Shown: positions 18,446-59,551 of the stretch, piece by piece
How positions within the stretch are numbered: position 1 is the first letter of the stretch
Layout of the letters: every line of letters begins with the position of its first letter
DNA from: Schmidtea nova
Lineage: Eukaryota
Length of the DNA: 64,000 bases
Assembly: GCA_044892505.1 (NCBI GenBank)
Contig: CM097883.1
Coordinates: forward strand, 421,600,001 to 421,664,000
Direction: 5' to 3'
The notes under the pieces: generated by a model
The model's database searches: none
What the model was told of the DNA's origin: nothing
The model's input: only the letters and a program-made list of their open reading frames with translations
Translations under genes and position numbers: made by a program

Positions 18446-18568
18446 CCTTCTATCGGTCAGTTAGAACCCAAACGATGCGACAAGTCAGGAGTAGTTCTTG
18501 TGAAGGAGCTCACCTGCTGACTTGCGATCGGCTATTTTGCACATTTCCAACGTGAAGTATTAGGGTAA
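18446..18568 (+). ncRNA. Candidate structured RNA motif, copy 1
   Basis: Hairpin CAAGTCAG-GAG-T-AGTTCTT[GTGA]AGGAGCT-CAC-CTG-CTGACTTG within the CCTTCTATCGG..GGGTAA frame. Confidence 0.55.
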
Positions 18569-20214
18569 TTAACGGGTGCATAGACAGTATGACTTGTATG
18601 CGTATTGTAACTCTAGAAAGATGAGTGAGTGTAGGTTTGAATGGTTGTAGACTTAAGTAGGAAGGGAAGATCAAAATAAAGTAAATAGATCAAAGTTTAA
18701 GTTTGAATATACAATACACCAAAATAGTTAACAAGTGTCGAATAAGATATTGTCAGTGCATTCTTACGTAATCAACGATAAATTTTCCATAATCCTAGGA
18801 AACAGCTTGCATTTTCGTCAGCCTGTTGGAAATCTCATTAACCGTTGTAAAATTTGGCGTACAACCACAGTATATTTTTATTAAACCCGAAACACTAGAA
18901 ATGGAAACCAGTTTATGCGACTAGTAAAATACTTGTTTGATTAAATGACATTTTAGAGAAATTACGAGGGAGCTGGTAACTGCGAAAATTCAAGTAATAA
19001 TTCGGCTGAAAATCGACTAAATTTATGAGAGGGAAAATCCGATTTAAAGTATAACATAATCGATATATCTCGAGTAAATTAATGTAAATTAAAATAAAAT
19101 AACCGATACAACTTGACAAAAAAATATTGTACATCAAGAGTAATGAAGCGAACAGAGCATAAATCAAATAATTAATATCCGATATGGAATTAAATCTTGA
19201 CTATCCATCTCATGTTCATGGAATTTCTAGTAGTTACCGATTTCCCACAGAGAGATAGCGTGCAGAGACGACGAGAGTTTTGACTTCACAGTATTCAAGT
19301 ACCAGCTGGACGGTAGCATATGAAATCCGCAGTTAACAGTTAACGAGACGAACACCGGGAAAATACAGAGTAGGATAAAACTGATAATAAATTAATGCAG
19401 TCAGAGTTATCTGGAGAGTAGAGAATGCGGGTTTACGATGGAAAACGATGTAGACAGCAATTAACTAAAATTACCTAATAGGTTAGATGAGTAAGATACG
19501 ACCAATTAATGGATTCACTAATGGATTTTCCATTAGGAGGAATTTTTTTTTTCTAATGTACATTGACCGTGATGAAGAAGTGAAGAGGGAGGATGTTGTC
19601 TAATTTGTTAAACTAAATTGATGGGTAATGCCTAATGGACTGTTTGAATTATCGCGATAAATAATTTTCGATGATTTTTCCCTAATGAGTAAATGAAATT
19701 AATTGATTAAACTATTATGCACCCAAATCGAGAAACCTACCCGATATAATAATGATTGCGAATCCGCCATCACGGGAACAAGGAGCGTATCCCTAAATTA
19801 ATAAATAAATCTCAAAACAAAGGCCCAACCAATCTCCAAAAGTAATGAATAAATAGTAGTCAAAAACATAACAAGGGAAATGAATTGATCATTGACGTAA
19901 GAGTATAAGATGAAAAGCGTAAGCGAGAGTGATGACTATCGATCTAATAAAAGTATAGGTACGATTAATCATGGGGAAACAAAAGACACCAATTTTATTT
20001 TTCCTATTAACTAGTGGGGAAAGCCACGAACTGAGAGAATAGTAAATGTAACGGCAGGGGACTTATGAAATTGATCTGTATCTATTCTTTAACGTAACTG
20101 CTTTAGATCTATTATGAACAATACCTGCATCCGAATAAAAGGAGCGAGAGGATAGTCCGCCCCTACCATCCAAAAGACGATAAATCAGAAATCCTACAAT
20201 AACCACCTGATAGT

Positions 20215-20560
20215 GGCGATGCCACTCAAGGCTATACCCAGAGAATTAGCTAGCGAAATTGTCAAGGAGCACCGAGATACATTTCAGAGAACCGGGTTTA
20301 GTCTATTCCAGGACAGCCCCGATGAAATAATTTGGCACGGAAGCCAAGAGTGGCCTAATGATGTGAACCGCCAATAGCCAGAGGATCTACCCAAGTATTT
20401 CGTGGAGACGCCCATCGATGTTCCTGGGCGTTTCCAAATATATTACAGTGGCTCTATACCATAAGACGATTTTTGGAGTCTTAAATGATTTGTGTTCGGC
20501 CCTGCTCCTACAGAAATCCCTTTAGCCCCTCGGATGTCAGTGAGGCCAGTTAGAAGTTGA
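20215..20560 (+). pseudogene. Unknown ORF family B1, copy 2
   Basis: Homologous to 17165-17508, with several in-frame stops. Confidence 0.7.
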
Positions 20561-20912
20561 AGAACTTGTCGCGTATCTAAACTGAATCGTCTAAATTAAA
20601 TGTCGTAGATGTTTTTTTTTAAAAATGTCATCAGTTGTTCTTTTGTATTCATTTTAATTAAATGTTTTATTGATGTAGGAAAAGGTGTTTAGTGCAATCC
20701 ATTTAATAGGATATTATAGCATAGTAATCTATTCATGAGAGGTAGTATAAAGGGGCTGGTGATTAGGTATGTTAAGACGACGTATGAAGTTATAAATCGC
20801 TTATTTTATTACGCATTGAAAATGTGTGGGATTAGGACACGATTAAGTTACCTGTTTTGACTGAATTGGGCTAAAATCATTTGAAATTTTAGTTAAATCC
20901 GAAAGGAAGTAA

Positions 20913-21350
20913 ATGACGACGGAGAAGGATGTCATCGGATGGTTAAAGCGGAGAATTCTAGATCTAGAGAGTAGCTATTTCGCACCAGCCGAAATGAAAG
21001 CAACAAGAGAGAAATTAGCACGCGCTGTCAGAGTCATTGAAGACCAAAAAATCGAACTGAAGGCTGTCAAGATTGAATTGAACAACTGCAGAAAATTGAT
21101 CAGGCAAAAATTTATATCTGACAACCTAAGGGACTTGATTAGGCCACTGACGTTGTCAAATTGGTTCTCCGCACTAAACCATCCGGAGGAGAGCGTCAGC
21201 AATACGACTGAAGGTTCAAATGGAATATCCAGGAAAAGACGGAAAACGCGTGCACAGAGACTTCATCTCGCGAAACAGCGTCTCGAAGAGGAACAGAAGA
21301 AGTCGTCGACTGACTCAAATATAACCACCATTGAAAGTGAAAAAAACTAA
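20913..21350 (+). CDS. Intact 145-aa coiled-coil protein with basic tail (family B2)
   Basis: Heptad-like N-terminal half, C-terminal RKRRKTRAQR, and a degenerate paralogue at 17790. Confidence 0.65.
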   Translation: MTTEKDVIGWLKRRILDLESSYFAPAEMKATREKLARAVRVIEDQKIELKAVKIELNNCRKLIRQKFISDNLRDLIRPLTLSNWFSALNHPEESVSNTTEGSNGISRKRRKTRAQRLHLAKQRLEEEQKKSSTDSNITTIESEKN

Positions 21351-21559
21351 ATAAACTTGTCGTAATTGTATCATGGACTTTAATTATATGTATTGTATAA
21401 ATGTCTCTGTTGTTTTGTATTAATGATAACAATGTATAATAACTTAAAATATTAATCGAAAGTATTTTTCCGCCGAAGTGAATGGGTTTTACATAGCGTA
21501 TTGACAAAGGACACCCGAATTAGAGACCAGCGCAAGGGTGAGAGTAGGGAATAACATGA

Positions 21560-21679
21560 CCTTCTATCGGTCCAGTAGAACCCGTAGAGTGACAAATCGA
21601 GAGTAGTTCTTGTAAAGGAGCTCACCTGTCGATTTGCAGTCGGCTGTCATGCACAGTATCAACGTAAATAATAGGGTAT
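21560..21679 (+). ncRNA. Candidate structured RNA motif, copy 2
   Basis: CAAATCGA-GAG-T-AGTTCTT[GTAA]AGGAGCT-CAC-CTG-TCGATTTG, with compensatory changes relative to copy 1. Confidence 0.55.
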
Positions 21680-23454
21680 TTATGGATGCATCAGCAGTAA
21701 GATTTTTATGTGCGTGTTGTGCCTCTACAGCGAATGGTGACTGAGAGGAAAGATAAACATTTGTAAGTTTTGACGACAACACAACCAACAATCTCAAAGA
21801 AAAGCATGTATTTTCGGGAAATTTTAATCGCTATTATTTTGGCCTAAATAACTATTATTTTCATGATGTTTCAAATTTTTGAATTTTTAAAGTTAAAAAT
21901 TTAATTAAAAGTTTATTTAACTCCTATACCTAGTGCCTATCTTGCCCTATAAAATATATTTAATTTTTTGGTGAATTCTTAACATTTGTAATTTTGAAAC
22001 ATTTACCGAGGCCCTGGCAACGGCAACGGTTGTTACAGAAAAATTTAACATTTCTGAACCCTTATTTTAAACATTATATTATGGGTTAAAACGTTGACAC
22101 ACTCACATTATTTAATCAAATAAATTAATAAAATCTATATGGTACATTTTCCATACGTAAATCCAATATTACTTAAATTCTATTGGGTAAGTTATTTTAT
22201 AGGAAATTTTATGTTATAATCATTAATTGATTTTGTTTAAGGTAAATTTAGACGAAAATTCAAAGATTTCGGGAACTTTTCTAACTTGCCCGTATCTTGC
22301 TAATTTTATTTTCTTTATGGTTTTATTATTTCTATTTAAAAGATAAGTTGAATGTCCTTATTAAGACGTATGACAATTCGATTCACTTTTCTGTAATTTA
22401 AATTGGAAAAATATTTCGATGGGATGATTTTATTTCAGTCAATTTAGTTTACAATCAATTTGTTTCCTAATTTTCCAACTAGATATTTAATTCGACTGTA
22501 GTTCTTTTCACTCCATCACTGGGAATTCTGGCAATCACAATCTTACGCTACAATTTAAAACATTTTTGTCAGCCTCCCAGCACTTCTGGCTTCTTTTACG
22601 AATGGAATTTAACTTGTGCTTGTGAGAGGGCACTTCGGAAACTCGAAATCCGGAAACACTGTTCCATACGAAGAAAACTCCTGGTAAACTTATCCCTTCG
22701 CAATGCATTTGGCCCTTCAATAATCCTGTGATATGTAATATCTGAAGAAAACTTTTTCTTTTTGTTATGATTTAGAACTTGATGATATATAATACATTTC
22801 TATGGATTTTACTTGTTGATGCAGAGTCAAAAATAAATTTTTCTTATAGATGAATCGAGACATTGGTGAAAAATGGTAGTGATGACTTGTGAGTGAAAAT
22901 AGTACATTGATGAAAAATTTTGATGAGGTTTTCGATGTTATTATATGAGGTGCGTCGGGGTGAATCGGGGTGGTTATAAGGTAACAGGTAGGGTAAACCT
23001 TTAATGGATTCTCATGGCGGAAACATTTGATGTTAACAAGTGAAACGGTTAACGAATGATAAGTATAAATAAATGGTTCTTGTGCAGATTTTCCTGGGTG
23101 TAGCATGCTGTTGATGGGTGTGGTTAATGAATGAGGTGAAATAATTTGTATGGATGTATGGAGAAATAAATTCTCATGTGTGATGTATTGGATGTGGATG
23201 TAGATTGTTGACTGAACTGGTCAAATTAATTGTGAACAGGGGTGTTGTTCGATGCAAATAAATTATGTTAATGGATGTTGTGAGTTGAAATGAGTTTGTG
23301 ATATGGAATGTTGTAGTTGCAAATTATTGATTTAAACCAAATTCAGTTTTTGCCCAACACTTAGGATGGATAAATTTTTTAAATTCTAAAATAGGTGTAA
23401 AAATTAAGTTGTAACCTTTATAGTAAATCTAATTTTGGACCCTAAATTTAGACA

Positions 23455-25080
23455 ATGTTTGAAAAGATCAAGAAGCAAAAATTTAAACGAAAATTTATTT
23501 CACTCGAAGAAAAAATTGGAATTTTAGATGGTAAAAATTGCGGAGTAAAGCCTACATTGATTGAAAAATCATTAAATTTAAACAAAGCTACTATTCGAAT
23601 TGTATTGAAAAATCAAAACGAAATTATGTTGCCTTCGATTGTTCGCAGGGTGCGAAACGTTTATCGCGCAAACGATATATAAATATCGTAAAAATGGAAC
23701 ATGCTCATATAATATGGATAGAAAATTGTTTAAATAAACAAATCCATTTGAGCAAGTATTATTGAACAAAAAGCGCGCAGAACTTACACACATTTAAAGA
23801 AAGATGAGCTTTCTTCTAAAGAACAACCAAATCTATCATTTTTGGCAAGTAAAGGATGATTTGAAAATTTTAAAAAAGATCTTTGCGAATGTAAAATTTT
23901 AAGGAGAATAAGCTTCAGCAGATGTAGAGACTTCCCAAAAATTTATATTGGAAATACCACGAATTATTGAGAAGGAAGAATATTCAGTAGATCAAATTTT
24001 CAACGCTGATGAGACAGATTTGTATTGGAAGAGAATGACGTCTCAAACTTTTGTTTCAAAAAATGAGAAGCAAGCACCAGGTAAAAATCGTGTTATCCTT
24101 CACATGTGTAGTAACCTATCGTGAAATTTTGTAGTAAAATCAATGATAATAAATCATTCCAGGAATCCCAGAGAATTGAAAAACGTTGATAAGTCTCATC
24201 TACCAGTCTTCTGAATGTTTTTAAAGAAAAAAAATTTTGAGCTTTAAAGTTTTATTGTTCATTGATAATGCAAGTAGACATAGTAGAGAGTTGAATCATC
24301 CTAACGTAAAAATTGTGTTTTTTCCTCCAAAGTGTACGTCATTGATCCAACAATTATATCAAGGAATCATTGCAACATCCAAGGCATGCTACATAGGACA
24401 AGCATTCCAAAATATTTTCGAAAGACTGGAAAACGACGAAAAATGTAACGCTTACTCAAGCTTGGAACAAGTTTCCTATTTTAGATTGTGTTGCAATTAT
24501 AGTTTTGGCTTGCAAGAAATTAAATCAGTCTACACTTTATGCGTGTTGGAAACCCCAAATGATTCAGAGAGGAAACTGTGTCTCAATTGAGGAAGCAGAA
24601 TTTAACAGAATAATATAGGTTGCTTCTAATTTAGAAGGGGACGGATTTTCAGATATGAACATTGATGATGTTCGGGAACTATTTGAAGAACAAACTTTGA
24701 ATGAGGAAGAACTAATTGAAATAATAAATACATCCACTTTCAATTACGCAAATGATTCCGAAAACATTTGTAATATTAAAACGGTTCCTCATTTAAATTG
24801 AATTGATCTGCAAGAAAGAATAGTTTTAGCTAAAAAATTAGAAATTTTTTCGTTGAAAAAGATCCTTCAGTAATACGTAGCAGAAAATTTAAAAGAGAAT
24901 TGGAAAGTTCTTTAGCTCCTTATAGAAAAATTCTGAAGAATTGCAAGATTCAAATAGGCATGTACCTGCAACTACGTCAGATAACTTTTGTAATTATGGA
25001 GAAATTATCAGTGAAGAGGAGTTCAACCAACCTTGAGAAAAAAGAGAAGAGCTGCAATTTTTGTTGAGTGATGATGAAAA
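23455..25080 (+). pseudogene. Tigger/pogo-type transposase remnant
   Basis: CENP-B-like N-terminus KRKFISLEEKIGIL, ASKG*FENFKK, FNADETDLYWKRM and KVLLFIDNASRH..VKIVFFPPKCTSLIQ. Many stops and frameshifts; TIRs not found. Confidence 0.9.
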
Positions 25081-27336: not shown

Positions 27337-27340
<4 letters not shown>

Positions 27341-28810: not shown

Positions 28811-29640
28811 TTACACACACAGGCACCCCAACTGTCCCAACATAAATCGGTGACTCTCTCGGGCTCTACAGTATATCTTTTAAGCGACAAGCATTTACGA
28901 ACAAACATTGAATAAACAACCTACGTTAAATAACAAACATTTATCAGCCAACTTTAAAGAACTAAATATAATAAATATAAAAAACCCAAACACCCAACAA
29001 CAACATTGAATACACCCATACTCAAGAAAACATCAATTATTACTTCAACCCAAATGCAGACACAGATAGTGCAAACTCAATAAATTTAGTCCTCAATCCC
29101 AAGGCAAATATCCCAAACTTTTTCACAGACGAGAATGGGACGCCACAGAAATGGCTAGAATTTGCAAAATTAACGTTAAGCCTATCAGGCATAAAATCAT
29201 CTAAAACCGTCTGCTCACACATAATCGCCGCTCTCCCCAGCAACATACTAAATGAGAAAGCAGATCGAATAGGCGATATTTCTATAGACGACAACCCTTT
29301 CCAAAACCTATACAAATACGTTAATAAACAGAAATAAAGTCAACAGGCGGGAACTTCTTGAATCTTGACTTAAAGATATTCAACTGGGCAACGATAAACC
29401 GTCTGAATTCCTAAGAAGCCTAAAAACAAAACTTGAATATCTTCAGCACAAGATAACAAGTACAGGTTCAAAAGAATTCATTAAAGACCTGTTTATGCGT
29501 GCAATGCCCCAGAAATACGACGTATTTTAGCTGTCAGCAATTGCACAGACCTGAAAACCCTGGAAAACAGCCGACAAAATTAATGATGAAATATATCCAC
29601 AAATATGTAGGACATAAAAAAAATAGAATCCACAACATCA
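28811..29640 (+). mobile_element. gag: CsRn1-like Gypsy fragment: LTR core plus degenerate gag, PBS missing
   Basis: LTR core at 28822-28866. NIPNFFTDENGTPQKWLEFAKLTLSLSGI..QLGNDKPSEFLRSLK is homologous to 41093. No TGGTGTCAGAAG in this copy. Confidence 0.8.
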
Positions 29641-29646
29641 AAAAAT

Positions 29647-30400
29647 TTGTTTGCCAATATTAATAAAGAAATGGAAGAAAACCAGAAAATAAACAGTTCA
29701 AACCCAGAAAATTATTTATCGGAAGAAGGAAAAGAAGTAGTAAAAATCAATATGCAGTCGAATGAAAATGGGAAACCAGCAACTAGCCATTTCGGAGAAA
29801 AGTTTCATGGAGAACCATTCAATGGTGAAGTGAATAGATTGTGGGTGTTTCTGAAAGAACTTTAAATATATATATATATCGATTTACCGTTGGTCAAATG
29901 AAGCTATACGAGAACGAATGCCGTTATATTTGAGAGGAAGTGCACAAGATGCGTATATAGAAGCCAAAAAAGATAATGAAAAATTAAAATCATGGAATGA
30001 AATTATGGAATTTTTAATGAAAAACTTTGGAGTGGCCGAGGGAGAGAATCGGAAGATGTTAGATTTTCTCCATAGGAAACAGAAATACGAGGAATTGAAT
30101 GCGGGATTCGCATGCGAAATAAGACGTATGGCAAGGGAAGTTTTCGGTGAGGAGAAAGTGAAAGACGAAATATTAGTAGGAGTATTCCTGAGTGGACCTT
30201 AGTGTGAACCTTAGATGTCAAACATCAAAGACATTAAAAGAGTCATTAACTATGGCAAATCGATGCGAAATGTACATGGAACAACCAGTAAAAGTTGCAA
30301 AACAACCAACAGAATCAAAAATGATGACAAAAGATACAGTCACCAAAGAAATTCACGATAAAGATGTGAAGTATGTAAAAAATGGGGACACGTGAACAAT
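29647..30400 (+). pseudogene. gag: Gypsy Gag capsid region, frameshifted
   Basis: EPFNGEVNRLWVFLKEL..YRWSNEAIRERMPLYLRGSAQDAY..RKQKYEE..FACEIRRMAREVF. Shares the PLYLxGxAxDA motif with Gag 6036-7352. Confidence 0.85.
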
Positions 30401-36355: not shown

Positions 36356-36931
36356 ATGGAAGCAAAAATGGAAGCAAAAATGGACCAGGTACTGGAACAG
36401 CTGGCCGGAATCCACCGAAATATACGCCATCTAACTGCCTGCGTATTCGAGATGGAGGAGGAGAAGCTGTTGTACGCCGAGCTCCGAGGAACGACGGAGC
36501 GAATGGAGAAATTCCGTTCTCGGTGCTGAAAGGTGGAGTCCACTTGGACGAATGTGGATGGCACCGAGAAGATGCGGAAACAAATCCGGCTATTACAGGG
36601 TCAAGCGGCCAAGGATGTGCTCCAACTGCGGGACGTAAAAGTGCAATTAAGGCAACGAGACGCCGAAGTAGCGTAATTGCAAATCGACGCCGGTATCGTG
36701 GCATCGGTTTTTCCAAAGAGTGAATGTGCGAGCTTATAATTGTTCCCCGCTCGGGCAAACGGGAATGTTCAGCCTCAAGAAGCAGCGGTCAAACTTCCAA
36801 TCGATCGGCCGAAGAAATGGCGTCCAAGTAAAGGAGTTCGGGCCCGTAGAAAGCGGCGCCAAGAAGCTCGACTCCTCGGACAGCTACGAAAACTTTCCGT
36901 GGAAACAATCGATTTATCAATTGGAGAGTGA
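36356..36931 (+). pseudogene. Coiled-coil ORF family A (191 codons, three in-frame stops)
   Basis: MEAKMEAKMDQVLEQL..TERMEKFRSRC*KVESTWTNVDGTEKMRKQIRLL..KGVRARRKRRQEARLL. Confidence 0.8.
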
Positions 36932-37297
36932 TAATTTGGACTAATGATACATTCAATGTATATATATGTGCACTTTTATTTTCGTTATGTACATAGTATG
37001 TGTTTTGTTGTTTGTTAATTATATGTATTTTACTCTAATAATTTATTGAAATGAATACGATAATTGATGACATGGTTTGCTTGAGAATATTAAATGAAAA
37101 ATCAACGAATTACGAAAATAATAGAATCCATAAAAACATTTATACCCATTACGTTCAATCGAACCGTTCAATGATAAGTGGTCATCAACTTTTGAAATCA
37201 ATTACGGCGATCTGAATTTGCCTTCTTGTATTAATCGTAGTAGATCCCCGCATTAGATCAATGGTTAATGTTAAAAAGGGACAAAACGGGCATTAAA

Positions 37298-37423
37298 CCT
37301 TCTATCGGTAGCCCTTGTACCCAGGAGTTATTCGGTCAATCATAGTTTCGAATTTTTCGACGCTCACTGATTGCGAATACCCACCCATTTGTTGCATTAC
37401 CAACGTTACATTGTGACGGGCAA
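37298..37423 (+). ncRNA. Candidate structured RNA motif, copy 3
   Basis: TATTCG-GT-CAATCA-T-AGT-T-TCGA[ATTTT]TCGA-C-GCT-CAC-TGATTG-CGAATA. Confidence 0.55.
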
Positions 37424-38736
37424 CAAGATGGTTAATCTAATATTTTGTATGTTGAATTGTTGATGTAAGCCATAGCAATGTCAATGTTATATTGACGATC
37501 AACAACCCACCAATCTTAACACTTCTAACCATAAGGATTTTGGCACCGCGATGTAAAGATAGCTTCGGTCTTCTTAATGAATTCATTAGCACGATATTTA
37601 CTTTAGAAACTTAAAACATGTAATAAGAAAATACTCGAGTGCTTTTCTATGTTTTTATGATATATTACATTTTATTTTTAAGTATAAATAGAACACAATA
37701 ATATTGTACACGTATAATAATGTTTTTATAAATCAAAAATATGAAAGAATGCCAAATGCAAATGAATCAGAATAAATAAGAAAAAATAGAGTTAATTTAA
37801 AGCGAATATTACCATGAGTAGACTTGTCAATAAACAACATGAAATTTATAAATTCATAAAAGTAATATTGATGGACTTCGCACATATCACCCCGATGCAA
37901 TGCATACTCTTGCTAACCGCGTAGAGCCCCTTGGAGATGTTAATTTATTAGCAAGTGAAGGCATGAATTGTTATTGAATGAACTAAAAGATTTAAAAACT
38001 GAAATTAGTTCCAAATATTTAAATGCTTCAGTAATTCGAATTCGTGAACGACAAGTTAGATTGATATCCTTTTTCCTATATTTGTAAAATTCAGAAAACT
38101 TTTCAAAGAAATTTAATGTACTGCAATGAGTTTTAAAAATCAATATAACTGTTATGAAAAAAATATTGTTAAGAATATATCCAAATTCTTGTATGGAAAG
38201 GAAAAACGATTCAAATGATCAATATATCGGAAACGCTGATACTAACAATCGGGAAAATGCTCTAAAAGAAACCATGGAAAAATCAAATTTTATAAGTTTC
38301 TTGAGAAATCAAAAGAAATAATATATCTAGGGCGAATTTTCCATATCGAAAGGGAACCTATTATAGGTTGTAATTTTATTAGTTTGTGTTATTTAATGGG
38401 TATATTGTTGTGTACTGGGAAATTACTGAAGGGCCCAAAAGAGTCTCCCAGAACTTATTGTGGGGACGTTAATGTTGTACAATTCTATTGTTTTGATTAC
38501 GATTATTATTAGTATTGTCATTTTTATTAATGATATTATCTTTATTGTTGTTATTATTAATATTGTCACCGCTTAGATAATTGCCGACACCGGGAATCCC
38601 CCTTTTTATTATTGTGTATATGACGGCAATGATATCTTGAAATAATAATAAAGTCAAATAAAAATTTAAATTATGAAAATTAAAAAGAAGTCAATAGCCC
38701 TTGGCAATAATGAAATAAATGAATAATAGAAATTAA

Positions 38737-45900: not shown

Positions 45901-48449
45901 TAGGGGTATCGATAGAAAAGAGACATCTCTAAAGAGTGCACACAATATGATAGCAGGTTGAATTTTTCATAAAAAGGACAATATAAAAGTAAAATGGAAA
46001 GATCATTGCTAGCATAAAAAATATGAAAACGATGATCGAAGAAAAAATTGTGAAATATAAAGAGAATAATTTATTAAAAATTAGTAAAAATCCATATTGA
46101 AATATCATTAAAATAATAGAGATAGAACGAAAATTGTATTTTGAATAAATTGGACTGTTTTATTCGAATAACTTATGCGCACAGAATTGTACCATGATGA
46201 ATGCATATGAAATTTCAATGAATTAATAGAAAATAATATAAAAATTAACTTTTTCGAGAGAAAAAATGATTCGTTTTAGCGAGTAAGCAATAATCTGTAA
46301 AAGGTTTTTAATTAATTTACGTTGTGTACAGAGTATGCGGGAGTAACATTGAAAAACAATATAAATAAGGCGCTGAAAATTATTATTTCAACTTCTAACT
46401 TCATACTTGTTAGCCAATTTATTTTCATTTTTGCGCAAATTTTCAGTTAATTATATTGTTTTGATACTATTGAGTGATATTATCATAAACGATATTTTTT
46501 GAAAAAGATTTTTATTGTGTTCATTTTCAATATACTTTTCAATAGTGTACTCCTATATTTTTCTCAATTATACCGAATCACAGTCTAGTATTTACACCCA
46601 CTTGTTGTTCAAAAACTGATAATTGTTTGAATGAAGCGGTAACATAGCATGTAGAGAGCGCGCAAGAACTAAATATAAAATTCTATGAGCTAAAACACCA
46701 AGTAAAACATAATAATCACAAAACACCGAAATAATCAAATAAAACACGTATAAAAATTAAAATGAACAAATGCGCATAGAATATACAAGTAAAAAACACA
46801 TATATAACATAAAAACATCAATTATGGAATAAAATTACAAATTAAGAAAAATTAACATATTTTTAGAAGGAGAATTTCGATTTTTATCTTGTAAATTCAT
46901 AAAATATGAAAGAAAATTGGTTTAGATAAAAATTTAGTAAATTAAACTAAATTATAAAAAAACTTTAATTCAAAAGTAAAATTTTGGATTAAAATAAATT
47001 ATTTAAAGTTTTATAAAATTTTATGCAAAAATAACTAATTTGATTTTGCGTAAAATTATAAAAGTTAATTTTGGAAAATTCGAAAATTCCTTCTAGAACA
47101 ATTTGTTTTACTATATCAATGAAAACAACACACAGAACATCATATATATATACCGCCTTCAAAATAGAATTCGCCAGGATTTGCTAAAGAATTTAATGGT
47201 TAAATTACCGACTCTTGCAGACAACTTAAGAATTTTCCACTGGTTATTGAAATTACAGAGATCTAACAAGATTTGAAATCTGCCAAGCCGAATTTAAGGA
47301 TATGGTGAAGGTCATATCCCTTTTAAATTATGAAAAATGACAGGCAATATTTTGAGTATCTACCTAGACTAATTGCAAGAACACAAAACAGCCCCAAAAT
47401 TTCATCAACAATTGCAAAACACATTTTCATGATACCTTTCAAACTCTCGAATATAAAAATGACAAAATTGGTTCATCAATATTACAATCCAAGGATATAA
47501 AGTCCATTCCAAAGATGTTATGACACCGATTTCGAGAATAGATGGTACCAGGTTAGCGTAGATTTCCGTAGATTAGTATAGAGTTATATTTTAATAATTA
47601 TTGATAATCGAGTTTTGACTTTTTTAAAGTTTTTGTGGTTTTGAATTTTTGAAAATGTTTGTACTTTTGGAATTTTTTAAAAAGTATTTTAAATTTTTAA
47701 ATTATTTAAAAGATTTGTCTTAAAAAAATTTAAGTTTTACCTAAAATGATCTTGACCTTTAACCTTAAAATAAAATTTTAGTATTACGGTATCGGTTATG
47801 TCAACGAATATTTAATAACAAACTATTTGATAACGTCATCAATGGCATAATAATTTTTATCTGGGGGTCTAAAAAATAGATGACTTGCTCCATTCACATT
47901 GGCCGACTCATCGATGACGACTTTTTGTTTATTGTATAGTTCACATAACTAGCTACTATCTGTTAGTTTTTTAAATTCCGTATATAAATGATATTCAAAA
48001 TAAACAAAAATGAATTAAATTTAAAATAAGTTTAATTAATTTAATACGATTATTTAATAATAAAAAACAATGTTAACATATTCTTTTTTGGAACCTGTTA
48101 CATTTAAGTAATGCATTTACAATATCCAAGTAAGAAAAATTGACGATATCGATATAAGAAATATATCAGAAATTTTGCTGATAATCAATAAAGAAATTCA
48201 ATCTAACGAAAATTTTACTTATATGAATTGCAATAAAGATTGCAATTTAGAAAATCTTGATGATATACAAAATAAAGGATTTAAAGAATCTAATGATATT
48301 GTGAAATCAGTTTGGAAGATAATAGATACAAACATTTGTGATTAAATAAAAAATTATTTTTCGTATTCTGTCCTTATTTTTTTAATTATTTGTGTGTGTA
48401 GATTATTTTAAAAAAATATTGAACTGTTAAAAGTTTTATTATCAAGTAA

Positions 48450-51571: not shown

Positions 51572-52580
51572 TGGTAACGCCCGCTTTGTAAAACATTTAA
51601 AAAATAATTAAATAAAAATTAAATAGTTAATAGCGGAGCTTGATTGGGGTGAGAGATGGTGGGGCGAGCCTGGAAGTCATAAGCCGTTAAACGGTCTTAT
51701 CGAAATCTATATAAATTTTATATGATATGGCCTGTGCATCACAAGCAAGTAGTTTTCTTGGTAATAAAGTAAAAAATGGTACTCATGTTGACTTTGCTGA
51801 TGGCTGTATATGTCGCGTTGATAAAAAAATGTAAATATAATGAATATTCAAGTGCAAATTCACCATCAGAATCTAATGAACATATTAATGATTCTTGTTC
51901 CGCAAATAATATATGAAACAAGTCGATAAAAATTCAAAGAATAAAATCGAGGCAAATCGCATCGCGTCTGTGTGCGCGGCAGTGATTTTTGTGTGGTATT
52001 CGGTATGTGCACACAGACGCGAGAATGTTGGATTGACTTTGGATTTTTAAAAAAAGTATAAATGAATCGATAGAATTTTGGAACTATATAAAATCTTTCC
52101 AGTTGTTGTTTGACTGCTCTAGTTTTTGGAGTATTCTGGTGAGAATTTTTAAAAACTGCTTATTGTTTATTGGAATTAAAAAGCATGTGGACAGTTTTCG
52201 TTTATCTGTGCTATTTGTATTAGATTTGTGATTTTCTGAATAAAATTATAATGGTTTTAAAATAAGTTCGGTGAATTTTCCGTTTTTAATTCGACTGAGT
52301 TCGAGTTTTCACGATGCGAGCAATTTGTATTTGGTATTGGAATTCATGCACAGCGGCGAGCTATTTACATTGTTGAGAAGTCATTTGTGTTTTCTAGAAA
52401 GCACTGTTCGGTTCTATGTTGGTCAAATCGTGTTGGCGTTGGAATATTTACATTGTCTTAATGTTGCCGCTAAGTTTCTGAAATTGGAAAATCACAGAAA
52501 ATCTTGGAATCCGATAATCGTATTAATTCTTTCGTTTCTCAAAATCATGCAAATCAATCGTAACTGGCTTGGGTCGACCA
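51572..52580. mobile_element. 1009-bp TG..CA insertion (solo-LTR-like) with 5-bp TSD
   Basis: GTTGT|TGGTAACG...GTCGACCA|GTTGT. Removing it restores piggyBac LDLLLYTG. Confidence 0.75.
52271..52465 (+). pseudogene. PKA catalytic subunit-like kinase fragment (subdomains IV-VIa)
   Basis: VNFPFLIRLSSSFHDASNLYLVLEFMHSGELFTLLR..RFYVGQIVLALEYLHCLN versus PKA [54 protein letters not shown]. Confidence 0.85.
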
Positions 52581-52585
52581 GTTGT

Positions 52586-53030
52586 ACACGGGTGTTACAA
52601 CAAACATAGTGCGTGACAATTTATTTGGTTTTAGTGATAGTGAGGTAAAATCTTTCACATATATTATATACCAACAATTGGTATTCAAGTCCAAATTTAG
52701 TCGAGTATTTGGACGTAAAAAAAAGTTTCCTCAAAAAGTGAGACGTGTAACTTTTGATTTGAAAAATAGCAACAAAATGTTAGCGATTTGATGAAAAGAG
52801 AAGCGTGACGTTTATATGTTGACAAATATTCACGATAGAAAATTAATATCTACACAAAATAATCGAAGAAAAAACGTAATGAAACCGGACTTTTTTGCCG
52901 ATTACATTCAAAATATGTGGATATCAGATAAAGCAGATATGCAGATAACTACTATTGAATGTGAACGGAAATTCATCAAGTGGTATAAAAATTTATTTTT
53001 CAAATTGTAGATTTAACTTTTGTTGAGGAT
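52586..53030 (+). pseudogene. piggyBac transposase, part 2
   Basis: YTG..MLAI**KEKRDVYMLTNIHD..KPDFFADYIQNMWISDKADMQ..RKFIKWYKNLFFKL. Confidence 0.85.
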
Positions 53031-53882
53031 CCGAAAATCTCAACTTGATGTTTCTTATATAAATAAAAACAAAACTGGTTCTTTGAAATTTTATTTAAGT
53101 TATAACAATTACAAATTTGATAAAAATAACATCAAAAAATATAATGATTTTTATTTATTTTATATGTATGTGTATGTGTATGTGAGTGCTTGCAGTTTCC
53201 TGAGCTCGAATGTGCAAATTCTGTATGCTCGAATTTAAGTTAAAAATATCGTTTACCGAATTTGTAATTCTTCTTAAAATATAAGATTTTATGAGTGTTT
53301 AGACTGAAAAATCAGTCTGGTTATATTTTAAATTTTTGTTGATACTCCATTTTGAGTGTCAACACACTATATATTTTTTAAAAATCTTTTGCACAAAATG
53401 TGCATTGTTTATTTTTGAGCACTTAGTGCTTTTTTTTCTGACACTAAGTGCCCTTTATTTATTCAAAAACAACGAGCTTTCTTTTAATTTTACGTTAAAA
53501 ATATTGACACTGCCCTAGAAAATATTTCACATAACAAAATTAATTATAATAAAATAACTCAAATCTTTTGTAAAATAATTACTGAAAGAAATTTCAATTT
53601 CTAATCACAATCACCTTTAACTACAAATTAGAACATTTTGTTTTTCACATTCATTAAAAACATTGACATTTTCACCGAAAATTCAAGACCTTGCTAACAT
53701 AATTATCAAAATAAATCACTATTAATATCGCAGAATATTTTATAAAAATTTGTCCAAAAATAGAAATAGAATCGAATTACGTTGAATACATACCACCTAC
53801 ACAAATTTGATATTGTAAATTGTTTATTGATAAAAATTTATTGCAATTTATATCGAATGAATTTTTAAAACGAAAATGATTT

Positions 53883-55083
53883 GTTATAAGTATACAATAG
53901 GGGGGCCACTTTTTTTTTAATTAAATTAAATAAATTTAAATATATAAATATAAATATAATCAATTAAATTTTAAAATATATCATAAGCCATGAATTTACA
54001 ACAAATATATGAACTTTCGCGTGACACACTGTCTTTAATAAGACATTTCCAAAGAGTAGGTTTGCTACGAGCCGATCCCACCTGCTCAAACTGCGGACGC
54101 AATATGAAACTTGTAAAAGATTCAAAAGTAGTAAATGAATATATATTTGTTTGTCGTAGTCGGTCACACGTAAATCCGCATCGCAACAAACAAACAATTA
54201 CAACCGGGAGTTTTTTTTGTAATTCCAAATTACATATTCGTGATCTTTTCCTACTAATGTATTTTTGGGGCGCGGAATGCTCTGTTAAACAAGTTCAGCT
54301 TTTTACTAATATTTCAAAAAAAACTATCATTCAATGGTACCAGTATTTTAGAGATATTGCCAGTTGGAAGTTGGTTTCTCAGCCTTTACTATTTGGTGGA
54401 GTTGATCATATCGTGCAAGCGGATGAATCGAAATTTATGAATTTGATGCATAATCGCGGAGAACCGAGAGGGAATGCACGCAGTGGTTGGGTTTTCGGAA
54501 TTATAGACTGTACTACGAAGAATGTACACTTCGAGTTCGTTTATAATAGGACTCAACAAGAAATATTTCCAATTTTTTCGCGTGTTGTACTCCCGGGAAC
54601 GACTATTTGGACTGATGAATTCTCTACTTATACTGGTGGTCCCAGACGAGATCCAAATGCCCCTACACCTTTAGCTAAATTGGGACCGTATGTACACCAG
54701 TGGGTGAATCACTCGGAACACTTCATTGATCCCGTTACCGGCGTTAACACCAACGGAATAGAAGGTTCGTGGGCGTTGTGTAAACGAAAATTTAAGTATA
54801 TGTTTGGGACACGATGTAGCTTCATTCCTTCGTACCTCGACGAATTCATGTGGAGAAGAAGGTTTTGTCAAAATGAGCGAGCGTTTGATATATTGATTGA
54901 TCAAATAAGACAACGATATGATTTAAGTGTTGTGTAACGTTAACTTAAATAAAAACTGACTTAATAGTCTTCCCTATATATAAGTATTTTATTATACTCT
55001 TTATTAAATTAATAATTTATTATAATTTAAAATTTATTTAATTTAATTAAAAAAAAGTGGCCCCCCTATTGTATACTTATACC
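53883..55083 (+). mobile_element. Complete Merlin DNA transposon, 1201 bp
   Basis: About 55-bp TIRs (G.TATAAGTATACAATAGGGGGGCCAC..) and a perfect 8-bp TSD AATGATTT at 53875-53882 and 55084-55091. Confidence 0.97.
53990..54937 (+). CDS. Intact Merlin/ISXO2-like DDE transposase, 315 aa
   Basis: N-terminal Cys motif CSNC..C, VQADESKF, TIWTDEF, VNHSEHFIDPVTGVNTNGIEGSW and YLDEFMWRRRF. Confidence 0.97.
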   Translation: MNLQQIYELSRDTLSLIRHFQRVGLLRADPTCSNCGRNMKLVKDSKVVNEYIFVCRSRSHVNPHRNKQTITTGSFFCNSKLHIRDLFLLMYFWGAECSVKQVQLFTNISKKTIIQWYQYFRDIASWKLVSQPLLFGGVDHIVQADESKFMNLMHNRGEPRGNARSGWVFGIIDCTTKNVHFEFVYNRTQQEIFPIFSRVVLPGTTIWTDEFSTYTGGPRRDPNAPTPLAKLGPYVHQWVNHSEHFIDPVTGVNTNGIEGSWALCKRKFKYMFGTRCSFIPSYLDEFMWRRRFCQNERAFDILIDQIRQRYDLSVV

Positions 55084-56019
55084 AATGATTTTTGAAAAAC
55101 ATTAATCTTGAATTGTGCTTGTTGAAGAATTCTATTTCAAGATATAAACATGGAAGGAGAGTAGGTAGATCACCAAAGCAAAATAATTATCATCGAGATT
55201 TTTGTAATTTAGTTATAAAATTGTAAATAACAAACTATCTGAGTTTTGATAATTTGAACTCTTCGTCTTCTTTCACTTCTTTGACTAACAATGGACCTAT
55301 TTGTTTTACTTTTTCACTGGGTCAATTTCATTTTTCACGAATTCCACTATTTCATTTACATATTCTGAATTCAAACTCTTTGAGATTTGGGGCAAACTAT
55401 CGTTTCTTTCCAATATTCTACGTTTATGCTAACCATTACATAATAAAACCAGAAAAATTTCAAATATCGAATGATGAAATTATTTGATTTTTAATTTATC
55501 AATATTTTTGAAAATAATTAATATTAACAATAATAACAACAATGAAGATAATAATAATAGTAATAACAACAATAATAATAGCAACAATGAAAATGTTTGT
55601 TCCCTTTAACCAAAAGTACAAATAAATAACCGATCAGATAAAGATGAGATGAATTGTTATATAAATCACAAAAACTGAATGAATTTGTCACATAAAATTG
55701 TCAAAAGATCAAATATATTGTTGTCTAAATCATAAGGCTGAATCAACAGATAAAATAGATTATTGTCCGCATCACAAGGTTGAATGGATTTGTCACACAG
55801 TAGAATTGTCGAACGATACAGTAGATTGTTATCTGAATCCCATCTTTTCTTCGGGAGAGATATTGTTGGTTGATGTATCAATATGTATATTTAACCTATA
55901 TCTAGTTGTACCTATGCTATAGTCTTCATCTAACTCAAATGTTTCTACCATTTTCACTGTCTCTAACACTTTACTAAATTGTTACAATTTATATTTGGTA
56001 GAAACTGGAAATAATTCAC

Positions 56020-56322: not shown

Positions 56323-56454
56323 ATTTTTAGTTGAAAGGGTTGCAACTTTCATTGCAGATACCTCTAAAACAAAATTAAACAAGAAGAAATATTCAATACA
56401 CATTTATTTAAAAAATATCTTCTTTTCTGAGTTTTCCAATTTTTTTGCGTTTAT

Positions 56455-56713
56455 AAATTTCTTGCGTTTTGGATTTCAAATCTATTATAAATTTCTTGCG
56501 TTTGGGATTTCAAATCAATTATAAATTTCTTGAGTTTTGAATTTCAAATTTATTGTAAATTGCTTGCGTTTGGATTTCAAATTTATCGTAAATTGCTTGA
56601 GTTTGAATTTCAAATCTATTGTAAATTGCTTGCGTTTGGATTTCAAATTTATCGTAAATTGCTTGCGTTTGGATTTCAAATTTATTGTAAAATGCTTGCG
56701 TTTTAATTTCAAA
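56455..56713. repeat. Minisatellite, about 8 copies of a 33-34-bp unit
   Basis: Unit approximately AAATTGCTTGCGTTTGGATTTCAAATTTATCGT, just 3' of the piggyBac ORF. Confidence 0.95.
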
Positions 56714-57057
56714 TCGGATATTTCTTTTTCTTCTTTTAAACAAACTTTTTTTTAAAAATCTATCTTTTTATTTAATTTAGTTATGTAAATATAATATATT
56801 GAATTAGTTAAAATGTAAATAAATATATATGACGGAGGCACTACATTAGTAATTTTTAGTTTCATTTTGTTTTTTATATTCTGGAATATTTTAATAGATA
56901 TAAATATTATTCACTTTTGTAATTTTTAAATTGTTTATAAACTTAACTGTCAAAATTTGTCAAAAATGTACTGTCAAAAACTGTTAAAATATAAGAATGT
57001 TTAGACTTAATATTTACATTAAAACTCATTTTATTTTTTATTTTTGTTTCCTTACTT

Positions 57058-57606: not shown

Positions 57607-58202
57607 CCTTACTTCACTTCTTTTATCTACTTTTTGCATTTCTAAATATAGTAATAATATATCATATAATTACTTAAAATTCTAAATTAAAGATCAACAA
57701 TCATTTTTAATTTCTAAATTTATCTTTAATTTGGAATCATCCTGTGACAGTAACACAAATCTTTAGCTTAAAGATTTAAAGATATTTTTCATAAATTTCT
57801 TTTTGATAATGTGAAATTAATTGTAAAATTCCATGTATTTTAGCCGTTGCTAAGACCTCGGTGATAATTTAAAAATTTTAAAGTTAAATTTTTACCAAAA
57901 TTTTAATACAATTTTATAGGGTGAGGAGAACGATTTAGGTCGATAAAATATGTATTAAAATCTAAATTGATTAAAACTTTAAGCTGAAATTAAGCAGTTC
58001 AAAATCAAGTAAACAATAGCCGTTTGGATTCGAAATTGCTAGCAATTGAATTTCCCAGAAATACATGTTTTTTAGAGAAAAACTTTAGCCCCGAGTTGAA
58101 TAGGGATTAGCTGGATTGTTTGGAGATTGATAAGTTTGAATTAGTGCATGGAAACGTGTTTGATAATAAATTATCATTTATGCTTTATTTTATAAATCAG
58201 AA

Positions 58203-58745
58203 ATGGAAGCCAAAATGGATTTGATGATGAAACAGATGACGGAGATGAACAGAAGTCTTAGGCGATTATCGATTCGCCTTGCAGAAATGGAAGAGGAGAT
58301 GAAACTCCTCTGTAACTCCGGACCATGACGGAACGCATGGAGAAGTTTCGCTCTTAGTGCCGAAAGATTGAAGCTACGTGGACGAACGTGGACGGCACTA
58401 AGAAGTTAAGAAAGCAAATAAAGTTGCTGCACGAGCAGGCAGCTGAAGATATATTCCAGACGCGGGCGTTAAAATTAAAGATAAGAAATCGCGACGCCGA
58501 GATCGCGCAATTAAAGGTGGATACCGGCATTGTGTCGGCAATGCAGCCGACTGTTTCGGAACTGTTTCCAGTGCGGGTAGATGAACAAACAATCACAATA
58601 AACCCAATGGAATCACAGTCGACGATCGCTTAAAGAAATGGCGACTCATCAAAGGAGTCCGCGCCCGTCGGAAACGGCGACAAATGGCTCGACTACTGTG
58701 ACAACTTTGTAAAGTCTCGGTGGAGACTATCGACTTATCAATCAC
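58203..58745 (+). pseudogene. Coiled-coil ORF family A, second full copy
   Basis: MEAKMDLMMKQM..TERMEKFRS*CRKIEATWTNVDGTKKLRKQIKLL..KGVRARRKRRQMARLL..VSVETIDLSI, with frameshifts. Confidence 0.8.
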
Positions 58746-59085
58746 TAAGATTGTGATTATTACTGTAAATTACTGTATATCTTTATGTTTTAATTATACG
58801 CATTGTATTAGCTTAGTTTATTTGAAAGTATGAATGGATTGATTGCCTGATACTGAAGTTTGATTGAAACAATAACGAGAGAAAATTCGTAAATGACTGG
58901 AACCTCCGTCTAACAATGAGCCAATTTCTCTAAAATTTCCTTTAAATTATTTGTCTTAGTAAGGACATAATATAGATTATGAGGTAAATTATCGTGACGT
59001 GATTATTCATTTAAACTGTCGCTTGAAACTTTAACGAATATTTATAAAATAATTGTTGAATAAGGGACTCAAAATTGGCAATAAT

Positions 59086-59225
59086 CCTTCTATCGGTAGC
59101 CCTTGAACCCACTGTGATGTTCAGTCAATCATAGTTTCGATTTTTCGACGCTCATTGTTGTATTACCACGATTTGTTGCATTACCACCATTTGTTGCATT
59201 ACCAACTTCACATTGTGACGGGCAA
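59086..59225 (+). ncRNA. Candidate structured RNA motif, copy 4 (partly decayed, short internal duplication)
   Basis: CAATCA-T-AGT-T-TCGA[TTTT]TCGA-C-GCT-CAT. Confidence 0.45.
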
Positions 59226-59424
59226 CAAAATGATTAAGCTAATGTTCTATGTGTTGAGTTGTTGATGGGATTCATAACAACGTCAAGGTCATATTGACAG
59301 TCAACAATCCACCAAAATTAGAGAATTTAGGATATTTTGTAAATTATCATTCGAAGGATAACAATCAAATTTAACAATGGTTAGATAGGGACCGAACACC
59401 GAAAATACTAAAAACGAGCACATA

Positions 59425-59551
59425 TCTTCTGTCGATAGCCCGTGAACCCGAAGAAATTACTCGAGCAATTATAGTTCTGGAAACAGCGCTCACTTTTTGT
59501 AAGTATTTTTCCCCATTAGTTACAGTGCCAACGTTGCATTGCGACAGGTAA
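59425..59551 (+). ncRNA. Candidate structured RNA motif, copy 5
   Basis: T-AGT-T-CTG[GAAA]CAG-C-GCT-CAC. The 5' TCTGTCG pairs with the 3' CGACAGG. Confidence 0.5.

What the first reader, a model, noticed from the sequence alone, without database searches (positions are those of the whole stretch)
18446..59551. Five copies of a covarying ~130-nt hairpin motif downstream of coiled-coil ORFs: candidate new structured RNA
Seen: copies at 18446-18568, 21560-21679, 37298-37423, 59086-59225 and 59425-59551, all on +. They lie a few hundred nt after a family A or B2 coiled-coil ORF (copies 4 and 5 in tandem after one ORF), although A and B2 show no clear sequence similarity. All keep CTTCTRTCG..ACCC..T-AGT-[stem-loop]-GCT-CAY..CAACKT..GGYAA. 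The stems change sequence while keeping pairing: CAAGTCAG/CTGACTTG, CAAATCGA/TCGATTTG and CAATCA/TGATTG. The apical loops are GTGA, GTAA, GAAA (all GNRA) or U-rich, and the U/CAC internal loop is nearly invariant. A closing stem (TCTATC or TCTGTC with GAYRG) also appears to covary. G-U pairs and GNRA loops work only on +, pointing to sense-strand RNA. Inference: a cis-acting element (packaging, 3' processing, protein binding) or an unclassified ribozyme. The hammerhead core CUGANGA is not present.
Basis: partly seen in the sequence, partly recalled or inferred. Interest (0 to 1): 0.85.

Follow-up and report, generated by a model that had tools for sequence, protein, structure and literature searches.

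The report
Conserved RNA module ending orphan repeats
Five copies of a roughly 150-200-nt, two-hairpin RNA-like module sit at the 3' end of small decayed repeat units that encode coiled-coil proteins; it is most likely a cis-acting 3' tail of a lineage-specific mobile element and matches no family in Rfam.

Summary
A covariance model finds exactly five copies, all on the + strand, and nothing else in the window. The module is larger than reported. Across 36 modelled pairs, 85% of cells pair (35-40% when partners are slid), and 21 pairs change on both sides.

The copies are the last 200-270 nt of dispersed, pseudogenised repeat units (A about 1.4 kb, B about 1.15 kb). Each unit carries a helical, arginine-rich ORF. 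The ORFs show purifying selection with saturated synonymous sites, yet the module is the best-conserved part (78% identity) and the only part shared by A and B.

Rfam, Pfam, PDB, 15 billion proteins, and viral, metagenome and prokaryote DNA gave no relative.

Best reading (about 0.5): a sense-strand 3'-tail RNA recognised by a copying or packaging protein, as in LINE/SINE shared tails. No reverse transcriptase partner, target duplication or poly(A) was seen. A new ribozyme is not excluded (about 0.1).

The parts
18401..18629 (+). Module copy c1 (family A): upstream box, core and tail. The core (model R2 match) is 18444-18598, with the 5' block at 18446-18457, ACCC at 18466-18469, H2 at 18478-18526 (inner hairpin 18493-18510, CAC bulge 18511-18513) and H3 at 18532-18587.
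21516..21745 (+). Module copy c2 (family A). The core is 21558-21708, with the 5' block at 21560-21571, H2 at 21590-21638 (inner hairpin 21605-21622, CAC 21623-21625) and H3 at 21644-21697.
37263..37518 (+). Module copy c3 (family B), the best-preserved copy. The core is 37296-37442, with the 5' block at 37298-37309, ACCC at 37319-37322, H2 at 37329-37379 (inner hairpin 37344-37364, CAC 37365-37367) and H3 at 37385-37431 (inner helix 37404-37418). A further terminal hairpin has arms at 37450-37464 and 37498-37512.
   Evidence: (I11)
59048..59320 (+). Module copy c4 (family B), decayed. The core is 59084-59244. H2 at 59118-59181 is disrupted by an internal duplication. H3 at 59187-59233 is intact.
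59380..59578 (+). Module copy c5, a solo module with no ORF of its own, lying about 60 nt after the end of unit B2. The core is 59423-59570, with H2 at 59458-59505 (two U.U mismatches) and H3 at 59513-59559.
17203..18629 (+). Repeat unit A1: two coding blocks separated by a poorly conserved stretch, then a spacer and module c1. It is colinear with A2 at 58% identity.
20297..21745 (+). Repeat unit A2: the same layout as A1, ending in module c2.
36356..37518 (+). Repeat unit B1: an ORF of about 190 codons, a spacer and module c3. It is colinear with B2 at 64% identity.
58168..59320 (+). Repeat unit B2: ORF, spacer and module c4. Its 5' limit is shared with fragment B3.
12745..12951 (-). B3: a fragment of the 5' part of a B unit in the opposite orientation. 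It shows that the family is dispersed rather than only tandem.
17203..18211 (+). A1 coding region, broken: at least two premature stops in the second block.
20297..21350 (+). A2 coding region, broken: three premature stops in the first block, and the two blocks lie in different frames. The second block is an intact 145-codon ORF (20913-21350), predicted all-helical with a long helix and a helical arginine-rich segment.
36356..36931 (+). B1 coding region, broken: three premature stops and no frame change.
58203..58749 (+). B2 coding region, broken: at least two premature stops and two frame changes.

Best explanation
The motif is the 3'-terminal cis-acting RNA module of a lineage-specific family of small mobile elements, most likely retroposons.

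Each unit would be transcribed in the sense of its ORF, so the module forms the end of the 3' UTR. It folds into two long irregular hairpins (H2 and H3), preceded by a highly conserved, largely single-stranded 5' block. The stems only need to pair, so their sequences drift and covary. The nucleotides that stay invariant are the internal loops (U/CAC next to A-U, G-C, U.G in H2; A.U.CCAA opposite G/GG in H3) and the 5' block. These would be the surface read by a protein.

That protein could be a reverse transcriptase supplied by an autonomous partner, as in stringent LINE/SINE pairs that share a 3' tail. It could also be the unit's own helical, arginine-rich protein. Recognition of the tail would select the RNA for copying from its 3' end.

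Shown here: the copies, their conservation, the covariation, the strand, the position at the unit ends, the dispersal and decay of the units, and past selection on the ORFs. Inferred: transcription, protein binding and retroposition.
For: 1. There are exactly five copies, all significant, and model R2 (built from the B copies only) recovers the A copies.
2. Structure: 84.6% of 175 cells pair, against 35-40% with slid partners. 21 of 36 pairs change on both sides, against 2-6. No shuffle in 500 reaches the observed values (H2 alone). In the inner part of H3, four consecutive pairs differ on both sides between A and B.
3. Sense strand: 15 G.U pairs on + against 7 on -, an invariant U.G pair, and GNRA loops only on +. 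No open frame is shared by the copies.
4. Position: unit homology runs colinearly through ORF, spacer and module, and stops 30-80 nt after H3.
5. The module is the best-conserved segment: 78% identity, against 60-65% for the ORF, 55% for the spacer and 51% for random pairs. In the ORFs, synonymous sites are saturated (pS 0.76-0.89) while pN is 0.09-0.30, and only in the sense frame. Neutral DNA of this age would not be alignable.
6. Mobile-element character: there are two A units, two B units, a B fragment on the opposite strand and a solo module. All lie among other transposon debris, and all ORFs carry stops of all three kinds.
7. The 5' ends vary while the 3' end is common: c5 is module only, and A2 reaches further 5' than A1.
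8. A and B proteins are not alignable yet share the module. This is the pattern of shared LINE/SINE tails (PMC1636434, PMC4176376).
Against: - No reverse transcriptase or endonuclease ORF with this tail occurs in the window (Pfam).
- No poly(A), 3' microsatellite or target-site duplication was recognised at the unit ends.
- B3 lacks its 3' part, which simple 5' truncation does not predict.
- The A units have a poorly conserved stretch between two coding blocks that could be an intron, which is unusual for a retroposon.
- All five modules are on one strand, as in a tandem gene cluster.
- Only about three independent lineages support the covariation, and the alignment used for counting was fitted to the model.
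- No relative was found outside the window, so nothing could be tested on independent data.
Confidence: 0.5

Rival explanations
1. The module is a new self-cleaving or otherwise catalytic RNA that forms the transcript's 3' end, or releases unit-length RNA.
For: The module is large and complex. 37 columns are invariant, 22 of them outside helices, and they cluster in internal loops and a 5' single-stranded block, as in ribozyme cores. Two modules lie in tandem (c4 and c5). Conservation has a sharp 5' edge at the CCTTC block. The layout of a small helical, arginine-rich ORF followed by a structured RNA resembles delta-like agents.
Against: No hit to any Rfam ribozyme model, even at E <= 10 with lax filters. 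A hand threading onto the HDV-like double pseudoknot found candidates for P1, P3 and P4 but no P2. The apical loops are not conserved. The solo copy c5 extends about 40 nt upstream of the block, so it does not begin at a would-be cleavage site. The prior for a new ribozyme class is low.
Confidence: 0.12
2. The units are members of a clustered host gene family, now partly pseudogenes. The module is a shared 3'-UTR regulatory element (for localisation, stability or translation), much as the histone 3' stem-loop is shared by unrelated histone genes.
For: All four units and all five modules are on the + strand within 42 kb. The ORFs show long-term purifying selection. The A units may contain an intron.
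Against: Every copy carries premature stops of all three kinds. There is an opposite-strand fragment and a solo module. The units are embedded in transposon debris. The flanks between units are not homologous, so this is not a segmental duplication. The proteins have no homologue in about 15 billion proteins.
Confidence: 0.12
3. The conservation acts on DNA. The hairpins would be a recombination site, a transposase binding site or a single-strand DNA origin at the end of a DNA transposon.
For: The module is at the unit end, and its inverted repeats could also form in DNA. The minus strand still pairs in 140 of 175 cells.
Against: The hairpins are irregular, with conserved bulges and 15 G.U (G.T) pairs, one of them invariant. 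No terminal inverted repeat matches it at the other unit end. No transposase, Rep/helicase, tyrosine recombinase or RuvC nuclease ORF lies in the units. The ORF is a short helical protein.
Confidence: 0.06
4. The module is an independent small non-coding RNA gene, for example a Pol III transcript, that happens to lie downstream of the ORFs.
For: A conserved box lies about 35-45 nt upstream of the core. The size of about 150 nt is typical of small RNAs.
Against: It is always colinear with the ORF-bearing unit. A T-run after H3 is present in only some copies. No tRNA-like gene was found by ARAGORN. No snRNA or other Rfam match. All copies show decay.
Confidence: 0.05

Closest known systems
Shared 3' tails of stringent-type LINEs and their partner SINEs (eel UnaL2/UnaSINE1, zebrafish ZfL2; PMC1636434, PMC4176376)
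   Same: A conserved structured RNA at the very 3' end of the unit, shared by elements that are otherwise unrelated. It is a stem with a functionally important internal loop, the stems are free to covary, and copies have a common 3' end.
   Different: Here both carriers encode a small helical, arginine-rich protein, and no partner encoding a reverse transcriptase has been seen. The module is much larger, with two long hairpins and a conserved 5' block, against a tail of about 60 nt. No terminal short repeats or poly(A) were found.
R2 retrotransposon 3' UTR RNA bound by the R2 protein for target-primed reverse transcription (PMC11194090)
   Same: A multi-helix 3' UTR fold of a few hundred nt, recognised by structure and by a few key nucleotides, on the sense strand at the element's end.
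   Different: R2 is site-specific in rDNA and encodes its own reverse transcriptase. Neither holds here. Rfam's retroelement families did not match.
ORF1-only 'half-LINE' elements such as mammalian HAL1 (from my own knowledge, not tested)
   Same: Small non-autonomous units that keep a coiled-coil, nucleic-acid-binding ORF1-like gene and the parental 3' end.
   Different: There is no detectable similarity to the L1 ORF1 family or any other Pfam family, and no parent LINE has been identified.
Ribozymes carried by retroelements: hammerheads in Penelope-like elements (PMC4209133) and HDV-like ribozymes in L1Tc, R2 and others (PMC3185411)
   Same: A conserved structured RNA carried by a mobile element, sometimes in tandem copies.
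   Different: Those ribozymes lie at the 5' end or in terminal repeats, and they match Rfam models. This module lies at the 3' end and matches none.
Delta-like agents (small coiled-coil, basic antigen ORF followed by a ribozyme)
   Same: An ORF of about 190 codons with an N-terminal helical part and an arginine-rich part, followed on the same strand by a structured RNA, in a unit of 1.15-1.4 kb.
   Different: There is no rod-like self-complementarity, no match to the delta antigen family and no HDV ribozyme match. The copies are genomic DNA repeats.

Membership tests
LINE/SINE-type shared 3' tail (reverse transcriptase recognition RNA) | Lies at the extreme 3' end of the repeated unit | tested here: met
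   Unit homology ends 30-80 nt after H3 in both A and B.
LINE/SINE-type shared 3' tail (reverse transcriptase recognition RNA) | Stem-loop or loops with covarying stems and conserved loop or internal-loop nucleotides | tested here: met
LINE/SINE-type shared 3' tail (reverse transcriptase recognition RNA) | The same tail is carried by an autonomous element that encodes a reverse transcriptase | tested here: inconclusive
   No reverse transcriptase ORF was found in 64 kb. The rest of the genome was not available.
LINE/SINE-type shared 3' tail (reverse transcriptase recognition RNA) | Ragged 5' truncations, target-site duplications, and a 3' poly(A) or short repeats | tested here: inconclusive
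   The 5' ends vary (c5 is a solo module). No duplication or poly(A) was seen at these old, fuzzy borders.
LINE/SINE-type shared 3' tail (reverse transcriptase recognition RNA) | Binding by the partner protein | not testable with these tools
   -
Known small self-cleaving ribozymes (hammerhead, HDV-like, twister, twister-sister, pistol, hatchet, hairpin, VS, hovlinc) | Match to the family's covariance model | tested here: not met
   The gathering-threshold scan of the window and E <= 10 scans over c1-c5 gave no ribozyme family.
Known small self-cleaving ribozymes (hammerhead, HDV-like, twister, twister-sister, pistol, hatchet, hairpin, VS, hovlinc) | HDV-like nested double pseudoknot (P1, P1.1, P2, P3, P4) | tested here: inconclusive
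   A hand threading found candidates for P1, P3 and P4 but no conserved P2. No formal pseudoknot search was run.
Known small self-cleaving ribozymes (hammerhead, HDV-like, twister, twister-sister, pistol, hatchet, hairpin, VS, hovlinc) | Site-specific self-cleavage | not testable with these tools
   -
Delta-like agents | Rod-like genome-wide self-complementarity | tested here: not met
   Only short AT-rich chance inverted repeats were found.
Delta-like agents | Delta-antigen homology | tested here: not met
   Pfam scans at E <= 0.01 and E <= 5 gave nothing, and PDB gave nothing.
Pol III small RNA gene or tRNA-derived SINE | tRNA-like head or internal boxes, and a T-run terminator | tested here: not met
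   ARAGORN found nothing. T-runs after H3 occur in only some copies.
Guide RNAs at transposon ends (omega RNA of TnpB/Fanzor) | An adjacent RuvC-type nuclease ORF | tested here: not met
   The adjacent ORFs are short, helical and match no Pfam family.

The most novel reading that the evidence does not exclude
The module is a new class of catalytic RNA, either self-cleaving or 3'-end-forming, carried by a previously undescribed type of small protein-coding retroposon. Its invariant internal loops and 5' block would form the active core.
Probability: 0.1. Interest if true: 0.85.

Novelty: new variant of a known kind. Interest (0 to 1): 0.45.

Why it matters
If the best reading holds, this is a new RNA family with unusually clear covariation. 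It would be the recognition tail of an undescribed group of very small, protein-coding, non-autonomous mobile elements. Two unrelated coding bodies have kept or acquired the same 3' tail.

That extends the LINE/SINE shared-tail principle to units of 1.1-1.4 kb that carry an ORF1-like gene. It also gives a handle (a covariance model) for finding their autonomous partner and for annotating this repeat class in an AT-rich eukaryotic genome whose repeats have no database relatives.

If the module instead proves catalytic, it would be a new ribozyme class.

Tried and rejected
- Rfam: the gathering-threshold scan of the whole window, and E <= 10 scans over all five copies, gave nothing meaningful.
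- Coding explanation: no frame on either strand is open in all copies, and indels of 1-2 nt occur inside conserved blocks.
- Variant genetic code: the in-frame stops are of all three kinds, so they are real breaks.
- Delta-like agent: no rod-like complementarity and no antigen or ribozyme match.
A 5' hairpin (H1) between the 5' block and the segment after ACCC is possible in every copy, but in different registers, with P about 0.25 per copy. I left it as unproven.
- An automated search for helices conserved across copies on the MAFFT alignment was too noisy to use.
- Searches for relatives all failed:
  - A DNA pattern in viral, metagenome and prokaryote collections gave only chance hits, which the model rejected.
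  - Protein searches with A and B ORF pieces gave nothing.
  - A full HMMER scan of 1.84 billion representatives gave only spurious hits to internally repetitive proteins.
  - Exact look-ups of window proteins failed.
- The organism could not be identified. The best relative of an intact Merlin-type transposase is only 60% identical.
- A literature search for the 5' block sequence found only unrelated primers.
- Structure prediction of the 145-aa ORF gave only helices. No fold search was run, because the model's pTM of 0.37 is too low.

Full report
**Context**

The window is AT-rich (about 30% GC), has no tRNA genes and has very few long ORFs. Several stretches are masked with N and were left alone.

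The ORFs that can be named are fragments of transposons:
- a mariner/Tc1-type transposase and its HTH domain (15400-16284, minus strand);
- a pogo/Tigger DDE_1 domain (24237-24590);
- retrotransposon gag and zinc-knuckle ORFs (29918-31462);
- an intact IS1595/Merlin-type transposase (53990-54937);
- one protein-kinase exon (52271-52609).

This is repeat-rich DNA of a eukaryote, probably an invertebrate animal. The species could not be identified. The closest relative of the intact Merlin transposase in about 5.8 billion protein clusters is 60% identical, and exact look-ups of window proteins found nothing.

**Check of the observation**

The five copies are at the stated places on the + strand. 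Model R1, built from four copies, was scored at every position of both strands. It finds these five (E = 3e-24 to 2e-11), and the next hit has E = 0.34.

**Anatomy of the module**

From 5' to 3' the module has these parts:
- A conserved G-rich box about 35-45 nt upstream of the core.
- A 12-nt block, CCTTCTATCGGT, which has two changes in copy 5.
- A short variable stretch, then GAACCC.
- H2, a long irregular hairpin of about 50 nt.
  - Its outer helices differ in sequence between copies.
  - Its inner part keeps A-U, G-C and U.G pairs next to a one-by-three internal loop (U opposite CAC).
  - It is capped by GTGA, GTAA, GAAA or a U-rich loop.
- A short linker.
  - An outer helix of 8-11 pairs encloses an eight-nucleotide internal loop ending in CAA.
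  - An inner helix begins with the conserved CGT. It is short with an ATT loop in family B and longer in family A.
  - One or two G lie opposite the internal loop.
- A tail of 30-80 nt. In family B the tail holds another hairpin (arms 37450-37464 and 37498-37512).

Coordinates for each copy are given under parts.

**Test of the structure**

To avoid fitting the A copies, I built model R2 from the three B-type copies alone, with H2 and H3 as its structure. It recovers both A copies (E = 6e-8 and 1.5e-5) and aligns their H3 as deduced by hand.

On that alignment of 36 pairs:

| Measure | Observed | Partners slid 1-3 columns |
|---|---|---|
| Cells forming a standard pair | 84.6% | 35-40% |
| Pairs with a change on both sides | 21 | 2-6 |

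No shuffle in 500 reaches the observed pairing or covariation score. H2 alone gives 89% pairing and 7 of 13 doubly changed pairs. In the inner part of the H3 outer helix, four consecutive pairs differ on both sides between A and B.

Caveats: there are only five sequences in about three lineages, and the alignment was fitted to the model. Thermodynamic z-scores are modest (-2.3 to -2.5 for copies 1-3). They are absent for the decayed copies 4 and 5.

A 5' hairpin (H1) is possible in each copy, but in shifting registers and at chance-like odds.

**Strand and coding**

The + strand pairs in 148 of 175 cells with 15 G.U pairs. The - strand would pair in 140 cells with 7. One U.G pair is invariant, and the GNRA loops exist only on +. 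No reading frame on either strand is open in all copies. The structure therefore belongs to the strand that also carries the upstream ORFs.

**What the module belongs to**

Sensitive self-comparison shows that the copies end larger repeat units:
- A1 (17203-18629) is colinear with A2 (20297-21745) at 58% identity.
- B1 (36356-37518) is colinear with B2 (58168-59320) at 64% identity.
- A fragment of the 5' part of a B unit lies on the opposite strand at 12745-12951.
- Copy 5 is a solo module that starts about 40 nt before the core and ends soon after H3.

Homology stops 30-80 nt after H3, and the flanks are unrelated. The module is therefore the 3' end of the unit.

**The ORFs**

- The B units encode about 190 codons: a helical N-terminal part and an arginine-rich C-terminal part.
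- The A units have two coding blocks separated by 360-390 poorly conserved nucleotides. This stretch could be an intron or a gap between two ORFs.
- The intact 145-codon block of A2 is predicted all-helical. It has one 42-residue helix and a helical arginine-rich segment (mean pLDDT 71).
- A and B proteins are not alignable.
- Neither has a Pfam, PDB or database relative.

All the coding regions are broken:
- A1 has at least two premature stops.
- A2 has three premature stops, and its two blocks lie in different frames.
- B1 has three premature stops.
- B2 has at least two premature stops and two frame changes.

The stops are of all three kinds, which rules out a variant genetic code.

**Selection**

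Between A1 and A2, and between B1 and B2, the sense frame shows saturated synonymous differences (pS 0.76-0.89). Non-synonymous differences are only 0.09-0.30. The other frames show no such contrast. The copies therefore come from lineages that diverged for a long time while the protein was in use, and they decayed only recently.

Against that background the module is the best-conserved segment. It is 78% identical over all columns, against 60-65% for the ORFs, about 55% for the spacers and 51 +/- 3% for random pairs. It is also the only part shared between A and B. That degree of conservation at saturated neutral distance means selection on the nucleotide sequence and its fold.

**Interpretation**

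The pattern has four elements:
- dispersed, decayed units in both orientations;
- a solo 3' fragment;
- variable 5' ends with a common 3' end;
- two unrelated coding bodies sharing one 3' structured tail.

This is the pattern of retroposons whose RNA is recognised at its 3' end. In stringent-type LINEs the element's protein recognises a stem-loop in the 3' tail, and partner SINEs share that tail (PMC1636434, PMC4176376). R2 uses a larger 3' UTR fold (PMC11194090).

I therefore read the module as a sense-strand recognition or packaging RNA. It would be bound by a partner reverse transcriptase, by the unit's own arginine-rich protein, or by both.

What is missing is serious. There is no reverse transcriptase partner in the window, no target duplication or poly(A), and no independent sequences. 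I put this reading at about 0.5.

Four rivals remain open, with confidences given under rival explanations:
- a new ribozyme;
- a 3'-UTR element of a clustered host gene family;
- a DNA-level site;
- a separate small-RNA gene.

A delta-like origin was considered because of the ORF type and unit size. It was rejected because there is no rod-like complementarity and no family match.

**Search for relatives**

A pattern built from the 5' block, ACCC and TAGTT was scanned in the viral, metagenome and prokaryote collections. All hits were chance matches that lack the hairpins and score 6-23 bits, against 120-170 bits for true copies. With the collections at hand, the module is known only from this window.

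2. Scripts printed frame translations of the unit regions as they stand. Stop symbols are visible in place in that output. Searches ran before I had recognised the units as mobile-element-like; searches ran after I had begun to suspect it.

A test of the element's mobility was left out and is named under referred steps.

Noticed in passing
window 53873-55092: An apparently intact Merlin/IS1595-type DNA transposon. It has a 315-aa transposase ORF (53990-54937, PF12762) flanked by inverted repeats of about 90 nt (53873-53963 and 55000-55092, 88% identical). The closest database relative of the transposase is only 60% identical.
   Followed up: partly
window 38502-43564: LTR-like direct repeats. 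43210-43564 matches 38502-38736 plus 39982-40109 at 95-98% identity. The left copy is split by an insertion of about 1.2 kb that carries a 146-aa ORF (38905-39345). The repeats flank an ORF containing a retroviral-protease-like motif (recognised by eye in the translation; Pfam found nothing) at 41423-42307.
   Followed up: no
window 56451-56748: A tandem array of a 33-34-nt unit, with about 8-9 copies at 85-95% identity.
   Followed up: no
window 7744-8767 and 9934-10901: Large inverted repeat arms (72-83% identity) that flank a region containing masked N runs (8989-9468). This may be a foldback-type element. The masked stretches were not examined.
   Followed up: no
window 1-476 and 40866-41282; also 29110-29310: A repeat family shared, in inverted orientation, between the start of the window and the gag region of the LTR-like element (85-91% identity). 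A more distant protein-level copy lies near 29.1 kb.
   Followed up: no
window 11583-11674 (+): A weak match to the module model (E = 0.69). It resembles the 5' block and the CCAAYGT region but lacks H2. It may be a sixth, heavily decayed copy or a chance match.
   Followed up: partly
window 35452-36031 and 46603-47184: Another dispersed repeat (75% identity, about 580 nt), with protein-level similarity in one frame. One copy lies just upstream of unit B1.
   Followed up: no
window 15400-16303 (-) and 24237-24590 (+): Decayed DNA transposons: a mariner/Tc1-type transposase with its HTH domain, and a pogo/Tigger DDE_1 fragment.
   Followed up: partly
window 52271-52609 (+): An ORF piece that matches the protein kinase domain (PF00069, E = 2e-14), probably an exon of a host gene.
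   Followed up: no
window 17908-17916: Inside the A1 coding region, a 9-nt stretch is perfectly complementary to the module's 5' block. The equivalent site in A2 is only partly complementary, so this is probably chance.
   Followed up: partly
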